Part shown: positions 13,506 through 30,787 of the stretch, in pieces
How the letters are laid out: each line of letters opens with the position of its first letter
How positions within the stretch are numbered: position 1 is the first letter of the stretch
Assembly (NCBI GenBank): GCA_964247055.1
Contig: OZ176050.1
Location: forward strand, 4,774,001 to 4,838,000
DNA: 64,000 nt
Direction: 5' to 3'
Source of the DNA: Paragordius varius
Lineage: Eukaryota; Animalia; Nematomorpha
Position numbers and translations under genes: made by a program
Notes under the pieces: generated by a model
What the model saw: the letters and a program-made list of their open reading frames with translations, nothing else
What the model was told of the DNA's origin: nothing
The model's database searches: none

Positions 13506-14957
13506 TTATGGTATTAAAAGCTTATCATAGTTTTCGACAGCCTTTCCAGCATAATAAAACCCTAACATTGCCGTTAAGGTTGTTAAATGCGCTCTTATAT
13601 CTGAATGAAATATGAATTTGCACATATAGATATGAGCAATTTGCCGGTTAGCAAAAATATACATTGTGGTTAGGATTGAGAACATGAGTAAATATGTCCA
13701 AAGTATATCACTCAGGAATCTTGTGAGCCAATTAAATTTGGTTTTTGGCATTATCACTGTTTCTATCCAACGTTCAGCCAAAAGCAAAATTGCGTTTATG
13801 AAGCAACCTAAAAAAATGTTGAGTGTAAGGCCATGCCATAACCATACAAAGGCAAATGATAAAAATGTGGCTGTAACTGTATCCCAGATATCATGAGTTT
13901 TAGATTTTGATCTGTCCTCCAAATAAGGTTTATATATATGGGACTTTATAAATGTGTACAATCCATAATCAAAGTATTTCCACATCATGGAGTACTTGAA
14001 TGGCCTGGTGACACAAATAGGGGCAAAGTATTTCAACAAATTGCGTTTATTTCCCCAAACTTTTGTTTTGTTATCGGTAAGAGGGTTGAATTTTGTTTCA
14101 TGGTTAAAATTAATTCCTTCAGTTTCTTTGAACATCCATAATTTTTGGTAGTAAAAAGAATTGAAACCCCATATTACCGTGTATTTTAAATGCAAAATGT
14201 GAAAATAGGAATATAGAACACCGGCTAACTCCCATCTTGAACTGTGGCTAACCACATCAGGATACTCTAAATAACGTGTATTATGGAAGAATCTAGGTAA
14301 TATATATTGCAACAATACAGTATAACCTAATAACTTAAGTACAATTTTAGCAACCTTTCCCCATTCGATTTTTTCAATTTTGATGCTAGAATTTGCATTA
14401 ATGGCATAGATATCATAGGGAATATATGGACCGAATAGATTGGTTGGATAATCTAACAAGTAATTTAAGATTAGGATATTATCAGCATCAAAAAAAATTT
14501 TAGGTGAAATCTTTTTTGATACATTCACCAATTTAAGGCATAAAATAATGTACAAATTTTGAGATTGAATATCCAAACGCCCCCAAAAAATTAATATATT
14601 CAATGCGATAAACAAGGAAAAAATATACAGTATTTTATCAACTTTTATTTGGATTAAAATAAAGATTAGGATGAACAGTATCAATGGATAACTTGCAGTA
14701 GTAAATAGGTATAATAAATTCAATACAAAAATCATGTAAATATTTGGGCATATTAAATGTAATACAAAATGCAATAAAAGTTTGGGAAAGTTGTCTAGCC
14801 AAAATTTCCATTCCGAATCTGATACATCCAAAAAGGAGTTTGATGATAATATGTTTGATAAATATCGAGTCGAAACACTGGAATATATTAGTGAGTTAAC
14901 AGCGCACAATGCATAAAATAAAATAAAAAATATTTTAAAATAGAATTCCCGGGGCAT
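13506..14957 (-). CDS. HHAT: MBOAT-family protein-cysteine N-palmitoyltransferase, Hedgehog acyltransferase (HHAT/Rasp)-like, single exon, 483 aa
   Basis: ATG-started 483-aa ORF with many TM segments. HHAT-type motifs YSMMWKYFDYGLYTFIKSHIYKP and FAFVWLWHG (MBOAT catalytic His present). Confidence 0.85.
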   Translation of the reverse strand: MPREFYFKIFFILFYALCAVNSLIYSSVSTRYLSNILSSNSFLDVSDSEWKFWLDNFPKLLLHFVLHLICPNIYMIFVLNLLYLFTTASYPLILFILIFILIQIKVDKILYIFSLFIALNILIFWGRLDIQSQNLYIILCLKLVNVSKKISPKIFFDADNILILNYLLDYPTNLFGPYIPYDIYAINANSSIKIEKIEWGKVAKIVLKLLGYTVLLQYILPRFFHNTRYLEYPDVVSHSSRWELAGVLYSYFHILHLKYTVIWGFNSFYYQKLWMFKETEGINFNHETKFNPLTDNKTKVWGNKRNLLKYFAPICVTRPFKYSMMWKYFDYGLYTFIKSHIYKPYLEDRSKSKTHDIWDTVTATFLSFAFVWLWHGLTLNIFLGCFINAILLLAERWIETVIMPKTKFNWLTRFLSDILWTYLLMFSILTTMYIFANRQIAHIYMCKFIFHSDIRAHLTTLTAMLGFYYAGKAVENYDKLLIP

Positions 14958-25743: not shown

Positions 25744-28700
25744 TTACCATTGTGTAATCATGATTATTATTAAACCGCAAAATACATGGATAATAAAAAA
25801 ATTATTAATTTGGCAGGTATTTCCATTCGATTTCATAGGGCTACTTATTTGATTCGTGTATAAAGCTATATCTTTGTCACTAATTTTTGAGGTATCACCG
25901 ACAAGAAAATCTCCATATCGTTCCAACATAATAACTATGACAGCGTTGGTCCAAGCGTAGTTTTCCTTTATATATATATATTATATATGGGAGAAAAAAT
26001 TATTTTACATGAAATTACTATACTAAAGTATAAATAAAAGCGTCAGAATTTTTTTACCTCATTAAATGGATAGGCATATTGTTTGTATTTGATCGTACGG
26101 ACGTCAGTCTTTAATAAGTAACATAAAATATAGGGTCAAGTTAATTATTTAAATATTTAATAGATTTGATGAAAAAATTACGTCGATAAAACTTTAGCAA
26201 GAATATATATTAAAGCACCTAGTTTAAATTAAACATAATTTGGTATTTACGCGAGGCAATAACATTATTCCAAATATTTATGTATCAATAAAAAAATCAA
26301 TTATAACCTTTTTAAAAGTCTTTCTTGTACGCCTATATAAATAATGTGCAGCATATATCCACTTTTGGGCTAGATCTCTGGCCAGGGCTTTGGCTTTGCT
26401 CGAATTCTGATTTTCAAAACCTTCTATCATAAAAAGCGTATAAGCAGGATTGGTAAATGGATAATCCCATTCATATTGTATGAGCGATTTCGATAATGGT
26501 ATTCCACCAGCATATTTCAAAAGTTCTTCATTCTAAGAAATATGATATGTCACAATACAAAGTTGTTATGCTAAAAAATATTATTAAGGTTAACACCTAC
26601 AGTTGTTAATTCAAAATTTTAATTTTTAAATTATATAAATATTCATCAATGAGTTACATTGAGGTATTTGATAATATTTTCCGTTCTTGACATATCAGAG
26701 TCGGGCGATTGGATATGTTCATAACATTGTGTAAATAAAGGCATGACATTTGAAGCATACCAATTGTCTAATAAGTTTTCCGACGTTTGATCCATATCAA
26801 ACCACATTCCCGCCTGCTCTGACCACAGAGTTTCGAGTGATCTGATTTTACTTTCTAATTGACGGTATTTGTAATGGGCTTGGGTTGGTAAGCCTAAATA
26901 AAGTAAAAATAAAACCTAATATTCAATCTCTAAATTGACAAAAAAATTTGTTTGAATTCGTAAAATAAAACAGAAAGTACAGTGTGCTCTAAGAAAATGT
27001 ATGAAAAAAACTTTAAATTATTTTTTGATTAATTTGATAGTAAACCTTAGTTATTAAATTAAAATTAAACAATTTTGTCTCTGTCACATAAATATATAAT
27101 CCTACCGTATAAGTTATAATATATACCAGCAATATTATAAAAATTTGCAAGGATACGCTCATTGGCACATAAAATAGCATTCAAATCAACCGGGATAATG
27201 TTTATAGGTGTCAATTTAGCGTGCGTATCGAAATGGATTTGAAAATTATCTTTGTCCAACAACCAACGACTCGATCTATCCCATCCAGATTCTGTCATTG
27301 TTGCTAAATTCCGATAGATCTGAGCTGCTTTTTCTACCATATAAAATATTTCTAATCTAAAATAAAATTTGAAAATTTCTAAAATGGTGATGAAGTAACA
27401 GTGGGTGTAGGGAATAAAAATAAAGATAATTTAAGCTTTATTTTTTGTTAGTGTATAACTTAGGGCTAGATGAATAAATGATAAAAATAAATTTTATTTT
27501 ACAAGTCTTTTTTAGGAATACGTTTACATAGAGATATCTCTATTACCTAAGATGGCCAACTTTAAAATAGATAAATGGAATCATTAGGTTAATAGCTCAA
27601 TTCAATTTATGATATTATTATAATCTATTGGCCTTTTATCCACGGGCAAACCAAATAAAATTTCCAAAAACGGTTAGATGGTTTATAGAATTGAACCGTA
27701 GGTCCAAACTTTTTCAATGTTTTTTTGAAAATTTTGGTAGAAGCTAACGTTCTTTGATATTTTTAAATAAAATCATGTATTTAAATTTTTCCGGAAAAAT
27801 TTGGCATATAGAAATTTTTATAATTTACATGCTTATATTTTTGTGATTTTTATCCACAGTGTATCAAAATAATAGACTACCCATAAATATAAATAGAACC
27901 ATAATCATAGCCATTAGATTATAAAAAACTGGAACAATTTAGTCAACCGTTAATTTTTAGGAAAAAATGGTTGAAATAGAAACCAGAAACAAAAAAATGT
28001 CTTAGATCGCTAAAAACGGTTCCAATGGCAATCCGTGTTAAAATTATACCGCATTTTATGTAAAAAATCTATTAATTTAATATTGTACCTACGTAAAAAA
28101 ATTAACCACAGCTTTAAGTAATATATAGATTTGAAATATTTAAAAATATTATTTAATATAATTACCAGGAAAATAAGTTGCCGTCAGAGCTACATCCTTA
28201 CTGTAGGCAAATGGTCTCTCATTTAATAATAAAAAATAAATATTATAAAAAAATTATATGATCACACAAATTTAGGCAATTTCATTATTTTAAATGACTG
28301 GGGTTTTTATTTTACATGTCTGTTGCCATGTATGAGATTTTCGTTTTAATTAGTTACTATGTGGAGAAAAAACACAGTGTTTAATACTTCATTACCTTTT
28401 CACTTTTTTGTCCTATTTTACATTTTGGGGTAGTTTCCCTAAGCTCAAATTTAAATAAACTAAAGTTGTGACAGTTATTTTTGTTAAAATTTAATTATCA
28501 AACATTTTTCTCGTGTATTAAAAAAAGCTTGCGTTTTTTACAGTTTAGTTACTTCTAGAGCCAATTGGTAAGCTCCAAAACACGCAAACAGCTATATAAA
28601 AATATTATTATAGTAGTTTTGCTAGTAAAATGTAGCCTCAAATCTTTTTACAGTTAATTATTTACTTTTGAACCATTATTTGTCTGTTGTATTAGCGATT

Positions 28701-30787
28701 TGAAAAAAATCATAGAAAAAAATGTCGGCAAAAAGTTTGAGATGAGAATTTTTTTATAATTTCACATTTTTTTAAAAAAAATTATATTATGCAGCTAAAA
28801 GGCTAAAGAAAGCATATCCAGCTATATACCTTAATTTTTAATAATAAGTGTTAAATATGCAACTAAATGAAAAACCCATATATTACAACAGACATGTAAT
28901 AATTCCCCTTTTAACAATTTAAATAAATAGCCTACAATAGCTGTCGTTACCATATTTAATATATATAACATCAAAGTCAAACGAATCTGATTTAAAATTT
29001 TACATAAAAATATATTGTGTATATAATGATACCGAGGATAATTTGTTTTAACATGGTAGGAGTGCAGTTGATGTACCTTACCTCCTCTATTTACGTATGT
29101 CACCCTGGAGTTCCAAAATTGCAATTCCCGTTCTAAGGATTGTATTGTTAATATGACAAATTCTGTATCGTTTGTAGCTTTGTAATATGCTTCCACCATC
29201 AGGGCTAATAATGGTAAACTGCTAATTCTTTCGTAATAAACACGATTCCCGTAGGGCACGAGGTTTGCCTGGTTACTAATATACAATTATTGGTGGTTAT
29301 TAAAAAGAAGTTTCTACGTTATAATAGAGTAAAATGAGAGTTAAAATCTAAAAAATTACATCTCCTGTAAATCCAATAGATTGCTGATTATCCCTTTGGC
29401 GCTTTCTGACATCCCCGACAATAGTAGGGCACGAACAATGAAATAGCTTTCACTAGCAAAATAATTTTATAAATAAATGTCCGAATATGCAAAAAATTGA
29501 TTAATAATATTACAAATATCTCAATTCATTCGTATTTTGATTTGGAGCAAAGAATCCGTGTTTGACGAAAACAGTGGAGTAGCGTGATTTGTAATGCCTG
29601 ACATTTTTGCTAACCTTGGAGTAACGTTAAATTAATAATTATATTAAGCTCAATGGCTTATCTAATACATATATGTCATAAAATTTTGGTTAAAAGCAAT
29701 AATATAAATTAAGTTTAAACCTTTCTTCCCAAATCGGTCCATTGATTGTGGATATCTTGAGCCCAAACACGCAAATTCTCGTCCTTTATTCGAGACAAAA
29801 ACTCAGGATTCGCTTTCCAATCCGGAGGGACCCAATATTCATAATCTTCCAGTATGGGTAAACTTTTATTTGTTATGTCATTGAACCAGATTCGGCTACT
29901 CAATGGTTTGTAATTGTTACGGATAAATTTGTGAAAAAGCTTTTGCCTAGATATCTGCGTTGAATTATTGCTGTCTGCAATCTTTGGTGCTATGGTTTGA
30001 AAGGCTTCTAATACTTTATCTATATGCAATACAAAAGCGTTGATGAGTGATTATAATGAGAAAAATACAGTAACGAGCACTATTATAGGCCAATCTGTAT
30101 TTTAAATGGATAAAAGGGTATTTAATTTACATGTCTGTTGCCATGTACGAGATTTTTCATTTTATTAGTTACATATCTAATTGAACACTCTATTTTTTCT
30201 CCATAATTGTCAAAAATGTACGTAAAAAAAGAAAAAATCTCCTACTAGGCAACTGATATGTAAATTATACCATTTAGCCATTTAAACTACAGTTGTGACC
30301 TATGATGTGCTCGTTACTGATTAAAGATTAAAAAAATGTAGGAAAAACTCATACCTGCGTTCGATAAAGTTTTATAGTTGAAATAATTTATTTGTTCACC
30401 AAAAAAATGAGAGGTTTGCATTGTGTGGAACAAATTGCCATAACAGAATATTTGGCTACATTATTAATACAAAATTAAATATGTATCAAAAAAATCTAAA
30501 ATGCATAAGCAATCTTTTATATTAACTAGATTAATTAAATTATCAAAAAACGAAAATTCCAATAGTATTAATGTTTGAAAATCTAAAAAGCGAATTTTTT
30601 TTTAATTTTTTCGGTTAGTAAAAACTTAGTCTTAATGAAGCCCTAAATAATTAATATATTGGATATTAAACCTGTCACAGGGAGGTAGTGATTTAACTGT
30701 AATCCATAAGATAAGTTCGATAAAAATTAAGAGAACCCCTGATAAGGATTTTAATTTTGGGGTTAAATTATCGGTTGCGGTCCACAT
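25744..30787 (-). CDS. Trehalase (GH37)-fold protein with degenerate active site, ~647 aa, N-terminal signal and C-terminal hydrophobic (GPI/TM-like) tail. Exons: 30787-30672, 30455-30355, 30019-29721, 29614-29514, 29452-29360, 29275-29033, 28215-28166, 27333-27127, 26893-26658, 26532-26308, 26108-26058, 25965-25744
   Basis: Colinear with animal trehalase: LPPCDSQIFCYGNLF, PPDWKANPEFLSRIKD..LRVWA, ESGWDRSSRW, IIPVDLNAIL, LWSEQAGMWFD, WYASNVMPL, WDYP, AWTNAVIVIMLERYGD. The 12 exons sum to 1944 nt with no internal stop. Confidence 0.9.
28300..30290. repeat. Two copies of a short palindromic repeat in trehalase-like introns (~28300-28470 and ~30105-30290)
   Basis: Shared TTTACATGTCTGTTGCCATGTA(T/C)GAGATTTT at ~28313 and ~30127. 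The second copy has an inverted counterpart at ~30235-30270. Confidence 0.6.

What the first reader, a model, noticed from the sequence alone, without database searches (positions are those of the whole stretch)
25744..30787. Intact but apparently catalytically dead, membrane-anchored trehalase homolog (GH37 pseudoenzyme or neofunctionalised receptor)
Seen: a perfectly spliceable 12-exon, ~647-aa ORF with a signal peptide and hydrophobic C-tail, in which nearly every GH37 signature is rewritten while scaffold motifs persist. PGGRFxExYYWDSY becomes PNQNTNELRYFESY; PNGxRxYYxxRSQPP becomes PYGNRVYYERISSLP; RPES becomes RPFA; QWDxPNxWAP becomes EWDYPFTNPA; MYEKYDV becomes TFKKTDV; the GGGGEY..QxGFGW loop becomes KYKQYAYPFNEENYAW. 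Known (E. coli TreA numbering, from memory, to be verified by alignment): catalytic acid D312 in SGWDFSSRW is kept (SGWDRSSRW), but catalytic base E496 appears to be Lys, and substrate contacts R152, W159, D160, N196, R205, Q207, E279 and E511 are changed. Inference: purifying selection keeps the fold but not trehalose hydrolysis. It could be a surface lectin, sensor, decoy or scaffold, or an enzyme for another substrate.
Basis: partly seen in the sequence, partly recalled or inferred. Interest (0 to 1): 0.8.

Follow-up and report, generated by a model that had tools for sequence, protein, structure and literature searches.

The report
Conserved catalytically disabled trehalase-like surface protein
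This worm genome's only trehalase-family gene is intact and shared with the horsehair worm Gordionus, but its catalytic base and most sugar-binding residues are replaced, so it very probably no longer splits trehalose and has taken on another job at the cell surface.

Summary
On the minus strand, 25744-30787, lie 12 GT-AG exons (1944 nt, 647 codons plus stop). Seven exon segments hit Pfam Trehalase (PF01204) in colinear order. Every quoted motif is present. In E. coli TreA numbering the acid D312 is kept, but the base E496 is Lys. R152, R205, N196, Q207, E279, W453 and the GGGGE511 loop are replaced.

New here: an exhaustive search of 1.84 billion representatives finds one orthologue, Gordionus 'trehalase-like' XP_065318389. 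It is about 45% identical, has the same exon layout and the same linked Acatn gene, and shares derived residues (E496K, N196Y, Q207S, E279F, W453N, Y157R). It is predicted as a complete GH37 barrel (pLDDT 89.7).

In the window's 110 Mb genome this is the only GH37 locus. No trehalose-6-phosphate synthase or phosphatase domain is detectable, and a positive control worked.

Best reading: an old, selectively maintained GH37 pseudoenzyme or neofunctionalised protein, secreted and probably GPI-anchored, in a probable hairworm.

Untested: expression, enzyme activity and the anchor. The spliced protein was never joined; the Gordionus protein served as proxy.

The parts
30672..30787 (-). Exon 1. The start ATG is at 30787 and is the first ATG of the open frame. 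It encodes an N-terminal hydrophobic segment (GVLLIFIELILWITV), a likely signal peptide, followed by ...PPCD.
   Evidence: donor GTTTAA
30355..30455 (-). Exon 2. It encodes (S)QIFCYGNLFHTMQTS..., the conserved animal-trehalase N-terminal 'IYC.G.LL..VQ' block. The following DSKxFVD block is altered to NYKTLSN.
   Evidence: 68% identical to Gordionus over 19 aa
29721..30019 (-). Exon 3 (99 full codons), matching PF01204 profile positions 55-99. The acceptor at 30019 was chosen because it keeps KVLEAF, which is homologous to the canonical 'vvLqaF'. Acceptors at 30013 to 29989 cannot be excluded without RNA.
29514..29614 (-). Exon 4. It carries the remnant of signature motif 1: APNQNTNELRY in place of PGGRFxExYY, so R152->N.
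29360..29452 (-). Exon 5. It encodes (F)ESYFIVRALLLSGM..., so W159->F and D160->E.
   Evidence: 67% identical to Gordionus
29033..29275 (-). Exon 6. It encodes PYGNRVYYERISSLPLL... (N196->Y, R205->I, Q207->S) and extends to ...HVKTNYP|R.
   Evidence: this exon was the query of the exhaustive search
28166..28215 (-). Exon 7. It encodes (R)PFAYSKDVALTATYFP. R277 is kept and E279->F (RPES becomes RPFA).
27127..27333 (-). Exon 8. It encodes ...MTESGWDRSSRW...PVDLNAILC. The catalytic-acid equivalent D312 is kept (codon 27278-27280). The acceptor at 27333 was chosen because it gives the same spacing as Gordionus.
26658..26893 (-). Exon 9, matching PF01204 profile positions 334-394.
26308..26532 (-). 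Exon 10. It carries the remnant of signature motif 2, EWDYPFTNPA (N451->F, W453->N), and ends in ...KTFKK. The first of the two Lys (codon 26311-26313) aligns with the catalytic base E496.
26058..26108 (-). Exon 11. It encodes TDVRTIKYKQYAYPFNE, which replaces the Gly-rich GGGGEY loop.
   Evidence: aligned by eye to Gordionus IDVNNYAKKYPEIEE
25744..25965 (-). Exon 12 with the stop codon (25744-25746). It encodes ENYAWTNAV..., then ...SSPMKSNGNTCQINN followed by a 15-residue hydrophobic tail (FFIIHVFCGLIIIMI) that ends 3 residues before the C-terminus. This layout resembles a GPI-attachment signal.

Best explanation
This is a real, intact, single-copy gene of the GH37 (trehalase) family in an AT-rich worm genome, most likely that of a horsehair worm.

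It encodes a secreted protein of 647 residues. The protein keeps the whole (alpha/alpha)6 trehalase barrel and is held at the outer face of the cell membrane by a C-terminal hydrophobic tail, probably exchanged for a GPI anchor. The anchor is inferred, not shown.

The inverting hydrolysis machinery has been dismantled. The general base Glu is a Lys, two of the three essential arginines are gone, and both signature motifs and the Gly-rich lid are rewritten.

The same replacements occur in the orthologue of Gordionus, which is only about 45% identical overall. The active site was therefore remodelled before the two lineages split, and the protein has been kept under selection since.

I conclude that it no longer hydrolyses trehalose. 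It most likely works as a non-catalytic, ligand-binding surface protein (a pseudoenzyme). This would parallel the chitinase-like lectins, Klotho and the amylase-like heavy chains of amino-acid transporters, which are surface proteins built on disabled glycosidase folds.

The rest of trehalose metabolism (canonical trehalase, TPS, TPP) is not detectable in this genome, so the gene looks like the co-opted remnant of a lost pathway.

Shown: gene structure, residue replacements, orthology, predicted fold of the orthologue, single copy.

Inferred: loss of activity, secretion and anchoring, a binding function.
For: - Gene model: 12 GT-AG exons give 1944 nt in one frame. Exon GC is 36.6% against 28.3% for the whole gene. 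The chance of no stop in about 640 codons is about 10^-23.5.
- Family: PF01204 hits on 7 exon segments, colinear.
- Residues: alignments to TreA and AtTRE1 keep D312 and give E496->K, R152->N, R205->I, N196->Y, Q207->S, E279->F and W453->N. The defining GH37 features are taken from PMC6007452 and PMC9450901.
- Departure from the family: 22 of 65 near-invariant GH37 columns deviate in the window protein and 29 in Gordionus, against a canonical median of 3.
- Orthologue: it is the only close hit among 1.84e9 representatives. It is Gordionus XP_065318389. It aligns colinearly over exons 2-12 at 34-68% identity per exon.
- Shared derived states: 11, including E496K. In a further 9 columns both proteins are derived but differ.
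- Gene structure and linkage: intron positions coincide at five junctions, and the loci have the same GC. A single-copy Acatn gene is linked tail-to-tail in both genomes.
- Fold: the AF2 model of the orthologue has pLDDT 89.7 and pTM 0.87. Its top structural matches are AtTRE1 and TreA at target-normalised TM 0.83-0.86. Pfam covers profile positions 3-512 of 512 but at 259 bits, against 447-591 bits for canonical trehalases.
- Rate: the terminal branch is 2.0 against a median of 0.71.
- Own genome: this is the only GH37 locus with three different queries. No PF00982 or PF02358 match was found. The positive control PF00343 was recovered as 12 exon hits.
Against: - No RNA evidence for transcription or for the splice junctions could be obtained.
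- No activity or binding data exist.
- The catalytic acid is retained (D in the window protein, E in Gordionus), as are R277, W311, W447, D448 and R199. The pocket is therefore remodelled rather than destroyed, which fits a new catalytic activity as well as it fits binding.
- The fold was predicted for the Gordionus protein only, and no coordinates were available to look for a substitute base.
- The GPI or transmembrane anchor rests on a hydropathy pattern alone.
- The six-frame genome scans score only the best candidates, so absence of a paralogue or of TPS is strong but not absolute.
- Organism identity is indirect.
Confidence: 0.65

Rival explanations
1. Neo-enzyme. The protein still catalyses a reaction, but on another substrate or by another chemistry. 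One possibility is phosphorolysis, with the retained acid (D/E) and an anion bound by the Lys-Lys/Arg pair that replaced the base. This would be analogous to GH65 phosphorylases, which share the barrel and acid of GH15 hydrolases but lack the base (from my own knowledge of those families).
For: The acid is kept as D or E. The Lys at the base position is identical in both species and is followed by K or R. 11 derived states are conserved between proteins that are 45% identical; 55% of the doubly derived columns share the new residue, against 34% identity at variable columns. This points to a selected pocket. Several pocket residues are kept (R199, R277, W311, W447, D448).
Against: No activity other than trehalase is known for GH37. 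Nine formerly invariant positions differ between the two orthologues, including R152 (N versus L) and R205 (I versus Y), which is loose for a precise catalytic site. In Gordionus G310 becomes I and D312 becomes E right at the acid. An extracellular GPI-anchored phosphorylase would be unusual.
Confidence: 0.2
2. It is still a working trehalase that uses non-canonical residues, with another carboxylate acting as the base.
For: The fold is complete and the acid motif SGWD.SSRW is kept. A parasite of insects bathed in trehalose would be expected to need a surface trehalase (inference from host biology).
Against: The base is Lys in both species. Two of the three arginines reported as essential for activity are lost, and both signature motifs and the GGGGEY loop are gone. 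22-29 of 65 near-invariant positions are changed. The Pfam score is less than half that of canonical trehalases.
Confidence: 0.07
3. It is a decaying pseudogene or an unexpressed relic.
For: No RNA support was found. The branch is long. The remainder of the pathway is absent.
Against: 647 codons without a stop in 28% GC DNA have a chance of about 10^-23.5. All 11 introns have GT-AG ends that keep the frame. Exon GC is raised. An intact orthologue with the same intron positions, linkage and derived residues exists in Gordionus, and its gene set came from an RNA-seq-guided annotation pipeline (10.1101/2023.06.26.546503).
Confidence: 0.04
4. It is a gene-model artefact: wrong exon choices, or unrecognised ultra-short introns, hide canonical motifs.
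For: Other notes on this genome report 21-33 nt introns that gene finders miss (s1-310072, s1-310042). Two acceptors (E3 and E8) are chosen by homology only.
Against: The altered motifs align position for position, without indels, to the canonical ones. They recur in the independently annotated Gordionus protein. No other reading frame or segment of the locus matches PF01204 or a canonical trehalase.
Confidence: 0.02

Closest known systems
Canonical GH37 trehalases (E. coli TreA/Tre37A, Arabidopsis TRE1, insect Tre-1/Tre-2, GPI-anchored vertebrate TREH)
   Same: Full-length PF01204 domain and the (alpha/alpha)6 barrel. The animal-type N-terminal block IFCYG..HT.Q. The catalytic-acid motif SGWD.SSRW, PVDLNA and the WD.P core. 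A signal peptide plus a C-terminal hydrophobic tail, as in membrane-bound animal trehalases.
   Different: The base E496 is Lys. R152 and R205 are lost. The signature motifs PGGRFxExYYWD and QWDxPNxW[PA]P and the GGGGEY loop are rewritten. 22 of 65 near-invariant positions are changed. The Pfam score is under half and the branch about three times longer.
Gordionus sp. m RMFG-2023 'trehalase-like' XP_065318389.1 / CAK9299123.1 (automatic annotation, not described in the literature searched)
   Same: It is the orthologue, with the same 12-exon layout, intron positions, Acatn linkage and GC content. It shares the derived residues Y157R, N196Y, Q207S, E279F, W453N, P455A, E496K and G523A. It has the same N- and C-terminal hydrophobic segments.
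   Different: It is only about 45% identical. In Gordionus the acid is Glu and the preceding Gly is Ile (SIWEESSRW). Nine formerly invariant positions carry different replacements.
Second GH37 domain of Strongyloides ratti 'Trehalase' A0A090LBJ2
   Same: It is a degenerate trehalase domain in a related phylum, with the base Glu replaced (by Gln) and the acid motif lost.
   Different: It groups with nematode trehalases in the tree, so the degeneration is independent. It sits in tandem with a canonical domain, so that genome keeps an active copy.
Glycosidase-fold pseudoenzymes of other families: GH18 chitinase-like lectins (YKL-40, insect IDGFs), GH1 Klotho co-receptors, GH13-like 4F2hc/rBAT (from my own knowledge)
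   Same: They are extracellular or membrane-bound proteins that keep a glycosidase fold after losing a catalytic carboxylate, and they act by binding.
   Different: They belong to different folds and families. No GH37 example was found in the papers searched. The ligand here is unknown.

Membership tests
GH37 / Pfam PF01204 (fold-level family) | Significant full-length match to the Trehalase profile | tested here: met
   Seven exon segments score above or near the 21-bit cut-off, colinearly at profile positions 55-475. The orthologue scores 258.6 bits over positions 3-512 of 512.
GH37 / Pfam PF01204 (fold-level family) | (alpha/alpha)6 barrel superposable on solved trehalases | tested here: met
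   The test was done on the Gordionus orthologue only. The model has pLDDT 89.7, and Foldseek gives target-normalised TM 0.83-0.86 to 7e9x, 7eaw, 2jf4 and 2wyn. The window protein was not folded, because the joined step was left out.
Active alpha,alpha-trehalase (EC 3.2.1.28) | General acid Asp (TreA D312) in SGWDFSSRW | tested here: met
   SGWDRSSRW in exon 8. Gordionus has Glu at this position.
Active alpha,alpha-trehalase (EC 3.2.1.28) | General base Glu (TreA E496) in M/F-E-K-Y | tested here: not met
   Lys in both the window protein and Gordionus. Glu is present in 39 of 42 canonical representatives.
Active alpha,alpha-trehalase (EC 3.2.1.28) | Three essential Arg (TreA R152, R205, R277; PMC6007452) | tested here: not met
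   R152->N and R205->I; only R277 is kept.
Active alpha,alpha-trehalase (EC 3.2.1.28) | Signature motif 1, PGGRFxExYYWDxY | tested here: not met
   The sequence is PNQNTNELRYFESY.
Active alpha,alpha-trehalase (EC 3.2.1.28) | Signature motif 2, QWDxPN[GA]W[PA]P | tested here: not met
   The sequence is EWDYPFTNPA; only W-D-x-P is kept.
Active alpha,alpha-trehalase (EC 3.2.1.28) | Glycine-rich loop GGGGEY | tested here: not met
   It is replaced by IKYKQYAYP.
Active alpha,alpha-trehalase (EC 3.2.1.28) | Hydrolysis of trehalose to glucose | not testable with these tools
   This needs an enzyme assay.
GPI-anchored or membrane-bound trehalase architecture | N-terminal signal peptide and C-terminal anchor signal | tested here: inconclusive
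   There are hydrophobic segments at both ends (Kyte-Doolittle hydropathy 2.9). Small residues (SNG) lie about 8 residues before a 15-residue tail that ends 3 residues from the C-terminus. Gordionus has the same layout. No SignalP or NetGPI was available.

The most novel reading that the evidence does not exclude
Horsehair worms grow inside insects, bathed in trehalose-rich blood, and feed through their body wall. On this reading they have lost trehalose metabolism altogether and have converted their single trehalase into a conserved surface protein with a new job. One version is a sensor, receptor or transporter partner for a host haemolymph ligand. The other is a GH37 enzyme with new chemistry: the acid is kept and the base is replaced by a cationic Lys-Lys/Arg site, as in phosphorylases derived from hydrolase folds. 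Either would be the first non-trehalase function in GH37.
Probability: 0.2. Interest if true: 0.8.

Novelty: new variant of a known kind. Interest (0 to 1): 0.62.

Why it matters
GH37 is regarded as a one-activity family, trehalase. A conserved lineage that keeps the barrel but has a Lys at the base position would be its first pseudoenzyme or neo-functional branch.

The biology adds weight. The carrier appears to be a hairworm, a gutless parasite that grows in insect haemolymph, where trehalose is the main sugar. Yet its genome shows no working trehalase and no trehalose synthase.

This raises testable questions about how these parasites feed on or sense their host. It also offers a natural experiment in how a glycosidase pocket is re-purposed.

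Practically, automatic annotation calls the Gordionus protein 'trehalase-like'. Metabolic reconstructions would therefore wrongly credit these worms with trehalase activity.

Tried and rejected
- RNA evidence. The single run search found no RNA holder. The one RNA-guess run that I laid held nothing of the gene. Runs X3, X6 and X7 gave only short low-depth pieces plus an intronic repeat. They allowed neither an expression test nor a dN/dS-type comparison.
- Word-index search with the Gordionus isoform. It found only that protein and a few canonical trehalases, and no further members of the clade.
- Organism and divergence yardstick using the single-exon MBOAT-like ORF. There were no hits at E<=1e-10.
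- Flanking ORFs. Only an MBOAT domain turned up, with no functional link.
- Literature. I found nothing on inactive GH37 proteins or on trehalose metabolism in Nematomorpha, and no open paper listing TreA ligand contacts.
- Scan notes. None mention trehalase.
- dN/dS against Gordionus was not computed. At about 45% protein identity in AT-rich genomes the synonymous sites are saturated.
- Canonical trehalase in Gordionus was not tested. No tool searches that genome.
- Joined step left out. The spliced full-length protein of the window gene was never assembled, translated as one piece, searched or folded. All searches were exon by exon, by reference. Exon DNA was pooled inside one script only to count GC.


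Full report
**1. What is in the sequence**

The region 25744-30787 is about 28% GC. On the minus strand it carries twelve open segments. Frame-consistent GT..AG junctions join them into this model:

| Exon | Coordinates |
|---|---|
| E1 | 30787-30672 |
| E2 | 30455-30355 |
| E3 | 30019-29721 |
| E4 | 29614-29514 |
| E5 | 29452-29360 |
| E6 | 29275-29033 |
| E7 | 28215-28166 |
| E8 | 27333-27127 |
| E9 | 26893-26658 |
| E10 | 26532-26308 |
| E11 | 26108-26058 |
| E12 | 25965-25744 |

- The exon lengths sum to 1944 nt, which is 647 codons plus a stop.
- Two acceptors were picked by homology. The E3 acceptor at 30019 keeps KVLEAF. The E8 acceptor at 27333 gives the same spacing as the Gordionus protein.
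- E6 runs on past '...RGGK' to '...HVKTNYP|R', which restores the canonical spacing before the RPxx motif.
- Exon GC is 36.6%, against 28.3% for the whole gene.
- About 640 codons without a stop have a chance of roughly 10^-23.5 in DNA of this composition.

**2. Family**

Scanned exon by exon, seven segments match Pfam Trehalase (PF01204) in colinear order, at profile positions 55 to 475. Exons 8 and 10 also align to solved trehalases, E. coli TreA and Arabidopsis TRE1.

**3. The active site**

I took E. coli TreA from the K-12 record. I aligned it onto the window by tblastn. I also built an alignment of 42 canonical GH37 representatives plus TreA and the Gordionus protein, and added the window's exon peptides as separate fragments.

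| TreA position or feature | Window protein |
|---|---|
| D312 (acid) | kept (SGWDRSSRW) |
| E496 (base) | Lys (TFKK\|TDV) |
| R152 | N |
| W159 | F |
| D160 | E |
| N196 | Y |
| R205 | I |
| Q207 | S |
| E279 | F |
| N451 | F |
| W453 | N |
| GGGGE511Y loop | IKYKQYAYP |

- Published work names the defining features of active GH37 trehalases (PMC6007452; PMC9450901). These are D312 and E496 as acid and base, three essential arginines, two signature motifs and the Gly-rich loop.
- Only the acid and one arginine (R277) survive here.
- Of 65 columns that are at least 85% invariant in the canonical set, the window protein deviates at 22. The canonical median is 3.
- That each changed residue contacts the substrate was not checked against a paper, apart from the arginines and the motifs.

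**4. It is not a one-off**

- An exhaustive phmmer search with exon 6 against 1.84 billion cluster representatives found canonical trehalases at 36-47% identity in that exon, with no near-identical entry.
- One hit, P0003, carries the same derived motifs.
- It is a Gordionus sp. m RMFG-2023 (horsehair worm) protein. Its full-length isoform is XP_065318389.1, labelled 'trehalase-like' (P0158, 625 aa).
- Among the 157 family sequences fetched (the 150 listed hits of the exhaustive search plus those), it is the only one with PYGNR...SS.P instead of PNGGR...RSQPP.

**5. Orthology with the Gordionus gene**

- P0158 aligns colinearly to exons 2-12 at 34-68% identity per exon, and about 45% over 467 aligned columns.
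- The Gordionus locus (L018) has the same GC, 27.5%, and one-to-one exon correspondence.
- Intron positions coincide at the five junctions that could be mapped.
- The Gordionus gene lies tail-to-tail next to an Acatn gene.
- In the window's genome the single Acatn locus lies about 55 kb away on the same contig, in the same relative orientation. By chance, a single-copy gene would fall that close in about 0.1% of cases in a 110 Mb genome.

**6. Shared derived residues**

At the 65 near-invariant columns the two proteins compare as follows:

| State in window and Gordionus | Columns |
|---|---|
| Both ancestral | 34 |
| Both derived, same new residue | 11 |
| Both derived, different residues | 9 |
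| Only one derived | 11 |

- The 11 shared derived states are Y157R, G167A, G192N, N196Y, Q207S, E279F, W453N, P455A, E496K, F518Y and G523A.
- Identity at the doubly derived columns is 55%. Identity at variable columns is 34%.
- The remodelling therefore predates the split of the two lineages, and at least part of it has been retained since.
- In Gordionus even the acid is changed (SIWEESSRW: G310I, D312E).

**7. Fold**

- I used the Gordionus orthologue as proxy, with an alignment that includes the window's exon peptides as separate rows.
- AlphaFold2 gives mean pLDDT 89.7 and pTM 0.87.
- Foldseek's best matches are Arabidopsis TRE1 and E. coli TreA, at target-normalised TM 0.83-0.86.
- Pfam covers profile positions 3-512 of 512, but at 259 bits against 447-591 bits for canonical animal trehalases.
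- In an ML tree the Gordionus protein sits among animal trehalases on a terminal branch of 2.0 substitutions per site, against a median of 0.71. Its exact position is unresolved.
- The degenerate second domain of a Strongyloides ratti tandem trehalase groups with nematode copies, so it is an independent case.

**8. Genome context**

- The window's assembly is 110.5 Mb in 44 contigs.
- It was scanned in six frames with the Pfam model, with the divergent protein and with a canonical trehalase. Every hit falls in this one gene.
- No GT20 trehalose-6-phosphate synthase (PF00982) or trehalose phosphatase (PF02358) match was found.
- A positive control, glycogen phosphorylase, was recovered as 12 exon hits with best E 2e-36.
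- These scans score only the best candidates, so absence is strong but not absolute.
- The immediate neighbours in the window are unremarkable.

**9. Organism**

- Names are coded.
- My own evidence is that the only orthologue is from Gordionus, with matching GC (26.9% in 10.1101/2023.06.26.546503), matching gene structure and matching linkage.
- Unchecked scan notes also call the genome hairworm-like.
- Published nematomorph genomes are 200-300 Mb (10.1101/2024.06.11.598342). This 110 Mb assembly would therefore be an unusual or different member, and the identity stays probable, not shown.

**10. Ends of the protein**

- Exon 1 has a hydrophobic core (GVLLIFIELILWITV) after a short basic stretch.
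- Exon 12 ends in ...KSNGNTCQINN, then 15 hydrophobic residues, then TQW.
- There is no charged cytoplasmic tail.
- Gordionus has the same layout.
- This pattern fits a signal peptide plus a GPI-attachment signal, as in vertebrate TREH (my own knowledge). No predictor was available.

**11. Expression**

No RNA run holds the stretch. The laid runs show only fragments and a high-copy repeat in introns 2 and 6. Expression is therefore untested.

**12. Interpretation**

- A decaying pseudogene is excluded. The evidence is the intact frame, the splice sites, the raised exon GC and the conserved orthologue.
- A still-active trehalase is very unlikely, because the base, two essential arginines, both signature motifs and the lid loop are lost in both species.
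- A conserved protein on a trehalase scaffold with a remodelled pocket remains.
- I favour a non-catalytic binding role (about 0.65). Three things support this. Nine formerly invariant pocket positions differ between the two orthologues. The acid itself varies. Surface pseudo-glycosidases are a known pattern in other GH families.
- A new catalytic activity (about 0.2) is not excluded. The D/E acid, the Lys conserved at the base position and several retained pocket residues are compatible with it.

**13. Novelty**

- Searches of the open literature found nothing on inactive GH37 proteins or on trehalose metabolism in Nematomorpha.
- The Gordionus protein exists only as an automatic 'trehalase-like' annotation.
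- I therefore rate this a new variant of a known kind. It is of moderate to high interest because of the parasite's trehalose-rich niche and the apparent loss of the whole pathway.

Noticed in passing
window 28280-28800 and 30100-30300: A dispersed repeat lies in introns 6 and 2 of the gene, in the same orientation, with the core ACATGTCTGTTGCCATGTAYGAGATTTT. It shows very high contig depth and many variants in runs X3, X6 and X7. This suggests a high-copy element, possibly MITE-like.
   Followed up: no
window 49748-51515 (minus): A full-length eukaryotic 18S rRNA gene (Rfam RF01960, 1523.7 bits, model positions 1-1831 of 1831). It agrees with scan note s1-310187.
   Followed up: partly
window 13509-14957 (minus): A single-exon 483-aa ORF with an MBOAT acyltransferase domain (PF03062, E 4.8e-11). 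The word-index search found no relatives at E<=1e-10.
   Followed up: partly
P0002 (Strongyloides ratti A0A090LBJ2, 966 aa): This tandem 'Trehalase' has a canonical first domain and a degenerate second domain, with Gln at the base position and the SGWD motif lost. In the tree the second domain groups with nematode copies, so it is an independent case of GH37 degeneration.
   Followed up: partly
window 25744-30787, runs X3/X6/X7: Runs labelled as three other (coded) organisms, from three other studies, hold identical 151-nt pieces of this locus at low depth. This would fit parasite DNA inside host or environmental samples.
   Followed up: no
G000:C1:4740454-4744373 (outside the window): The single Acatn (PF13000) gene lies about 55 kb from the trehalase-like gene, tail-to-tail. 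In Gordionus the two genes are 0.3 kb apart. This is conserved linkage despite a very different spacing.
   Followed up: partly
L018 13800-14420 (Gordionus locus): In Gordionus the introns between exons 6/7 and 7/8 are only about 40-50 nt. In the window gene the same introns are 817 and 832 nt.
   Followed up: no
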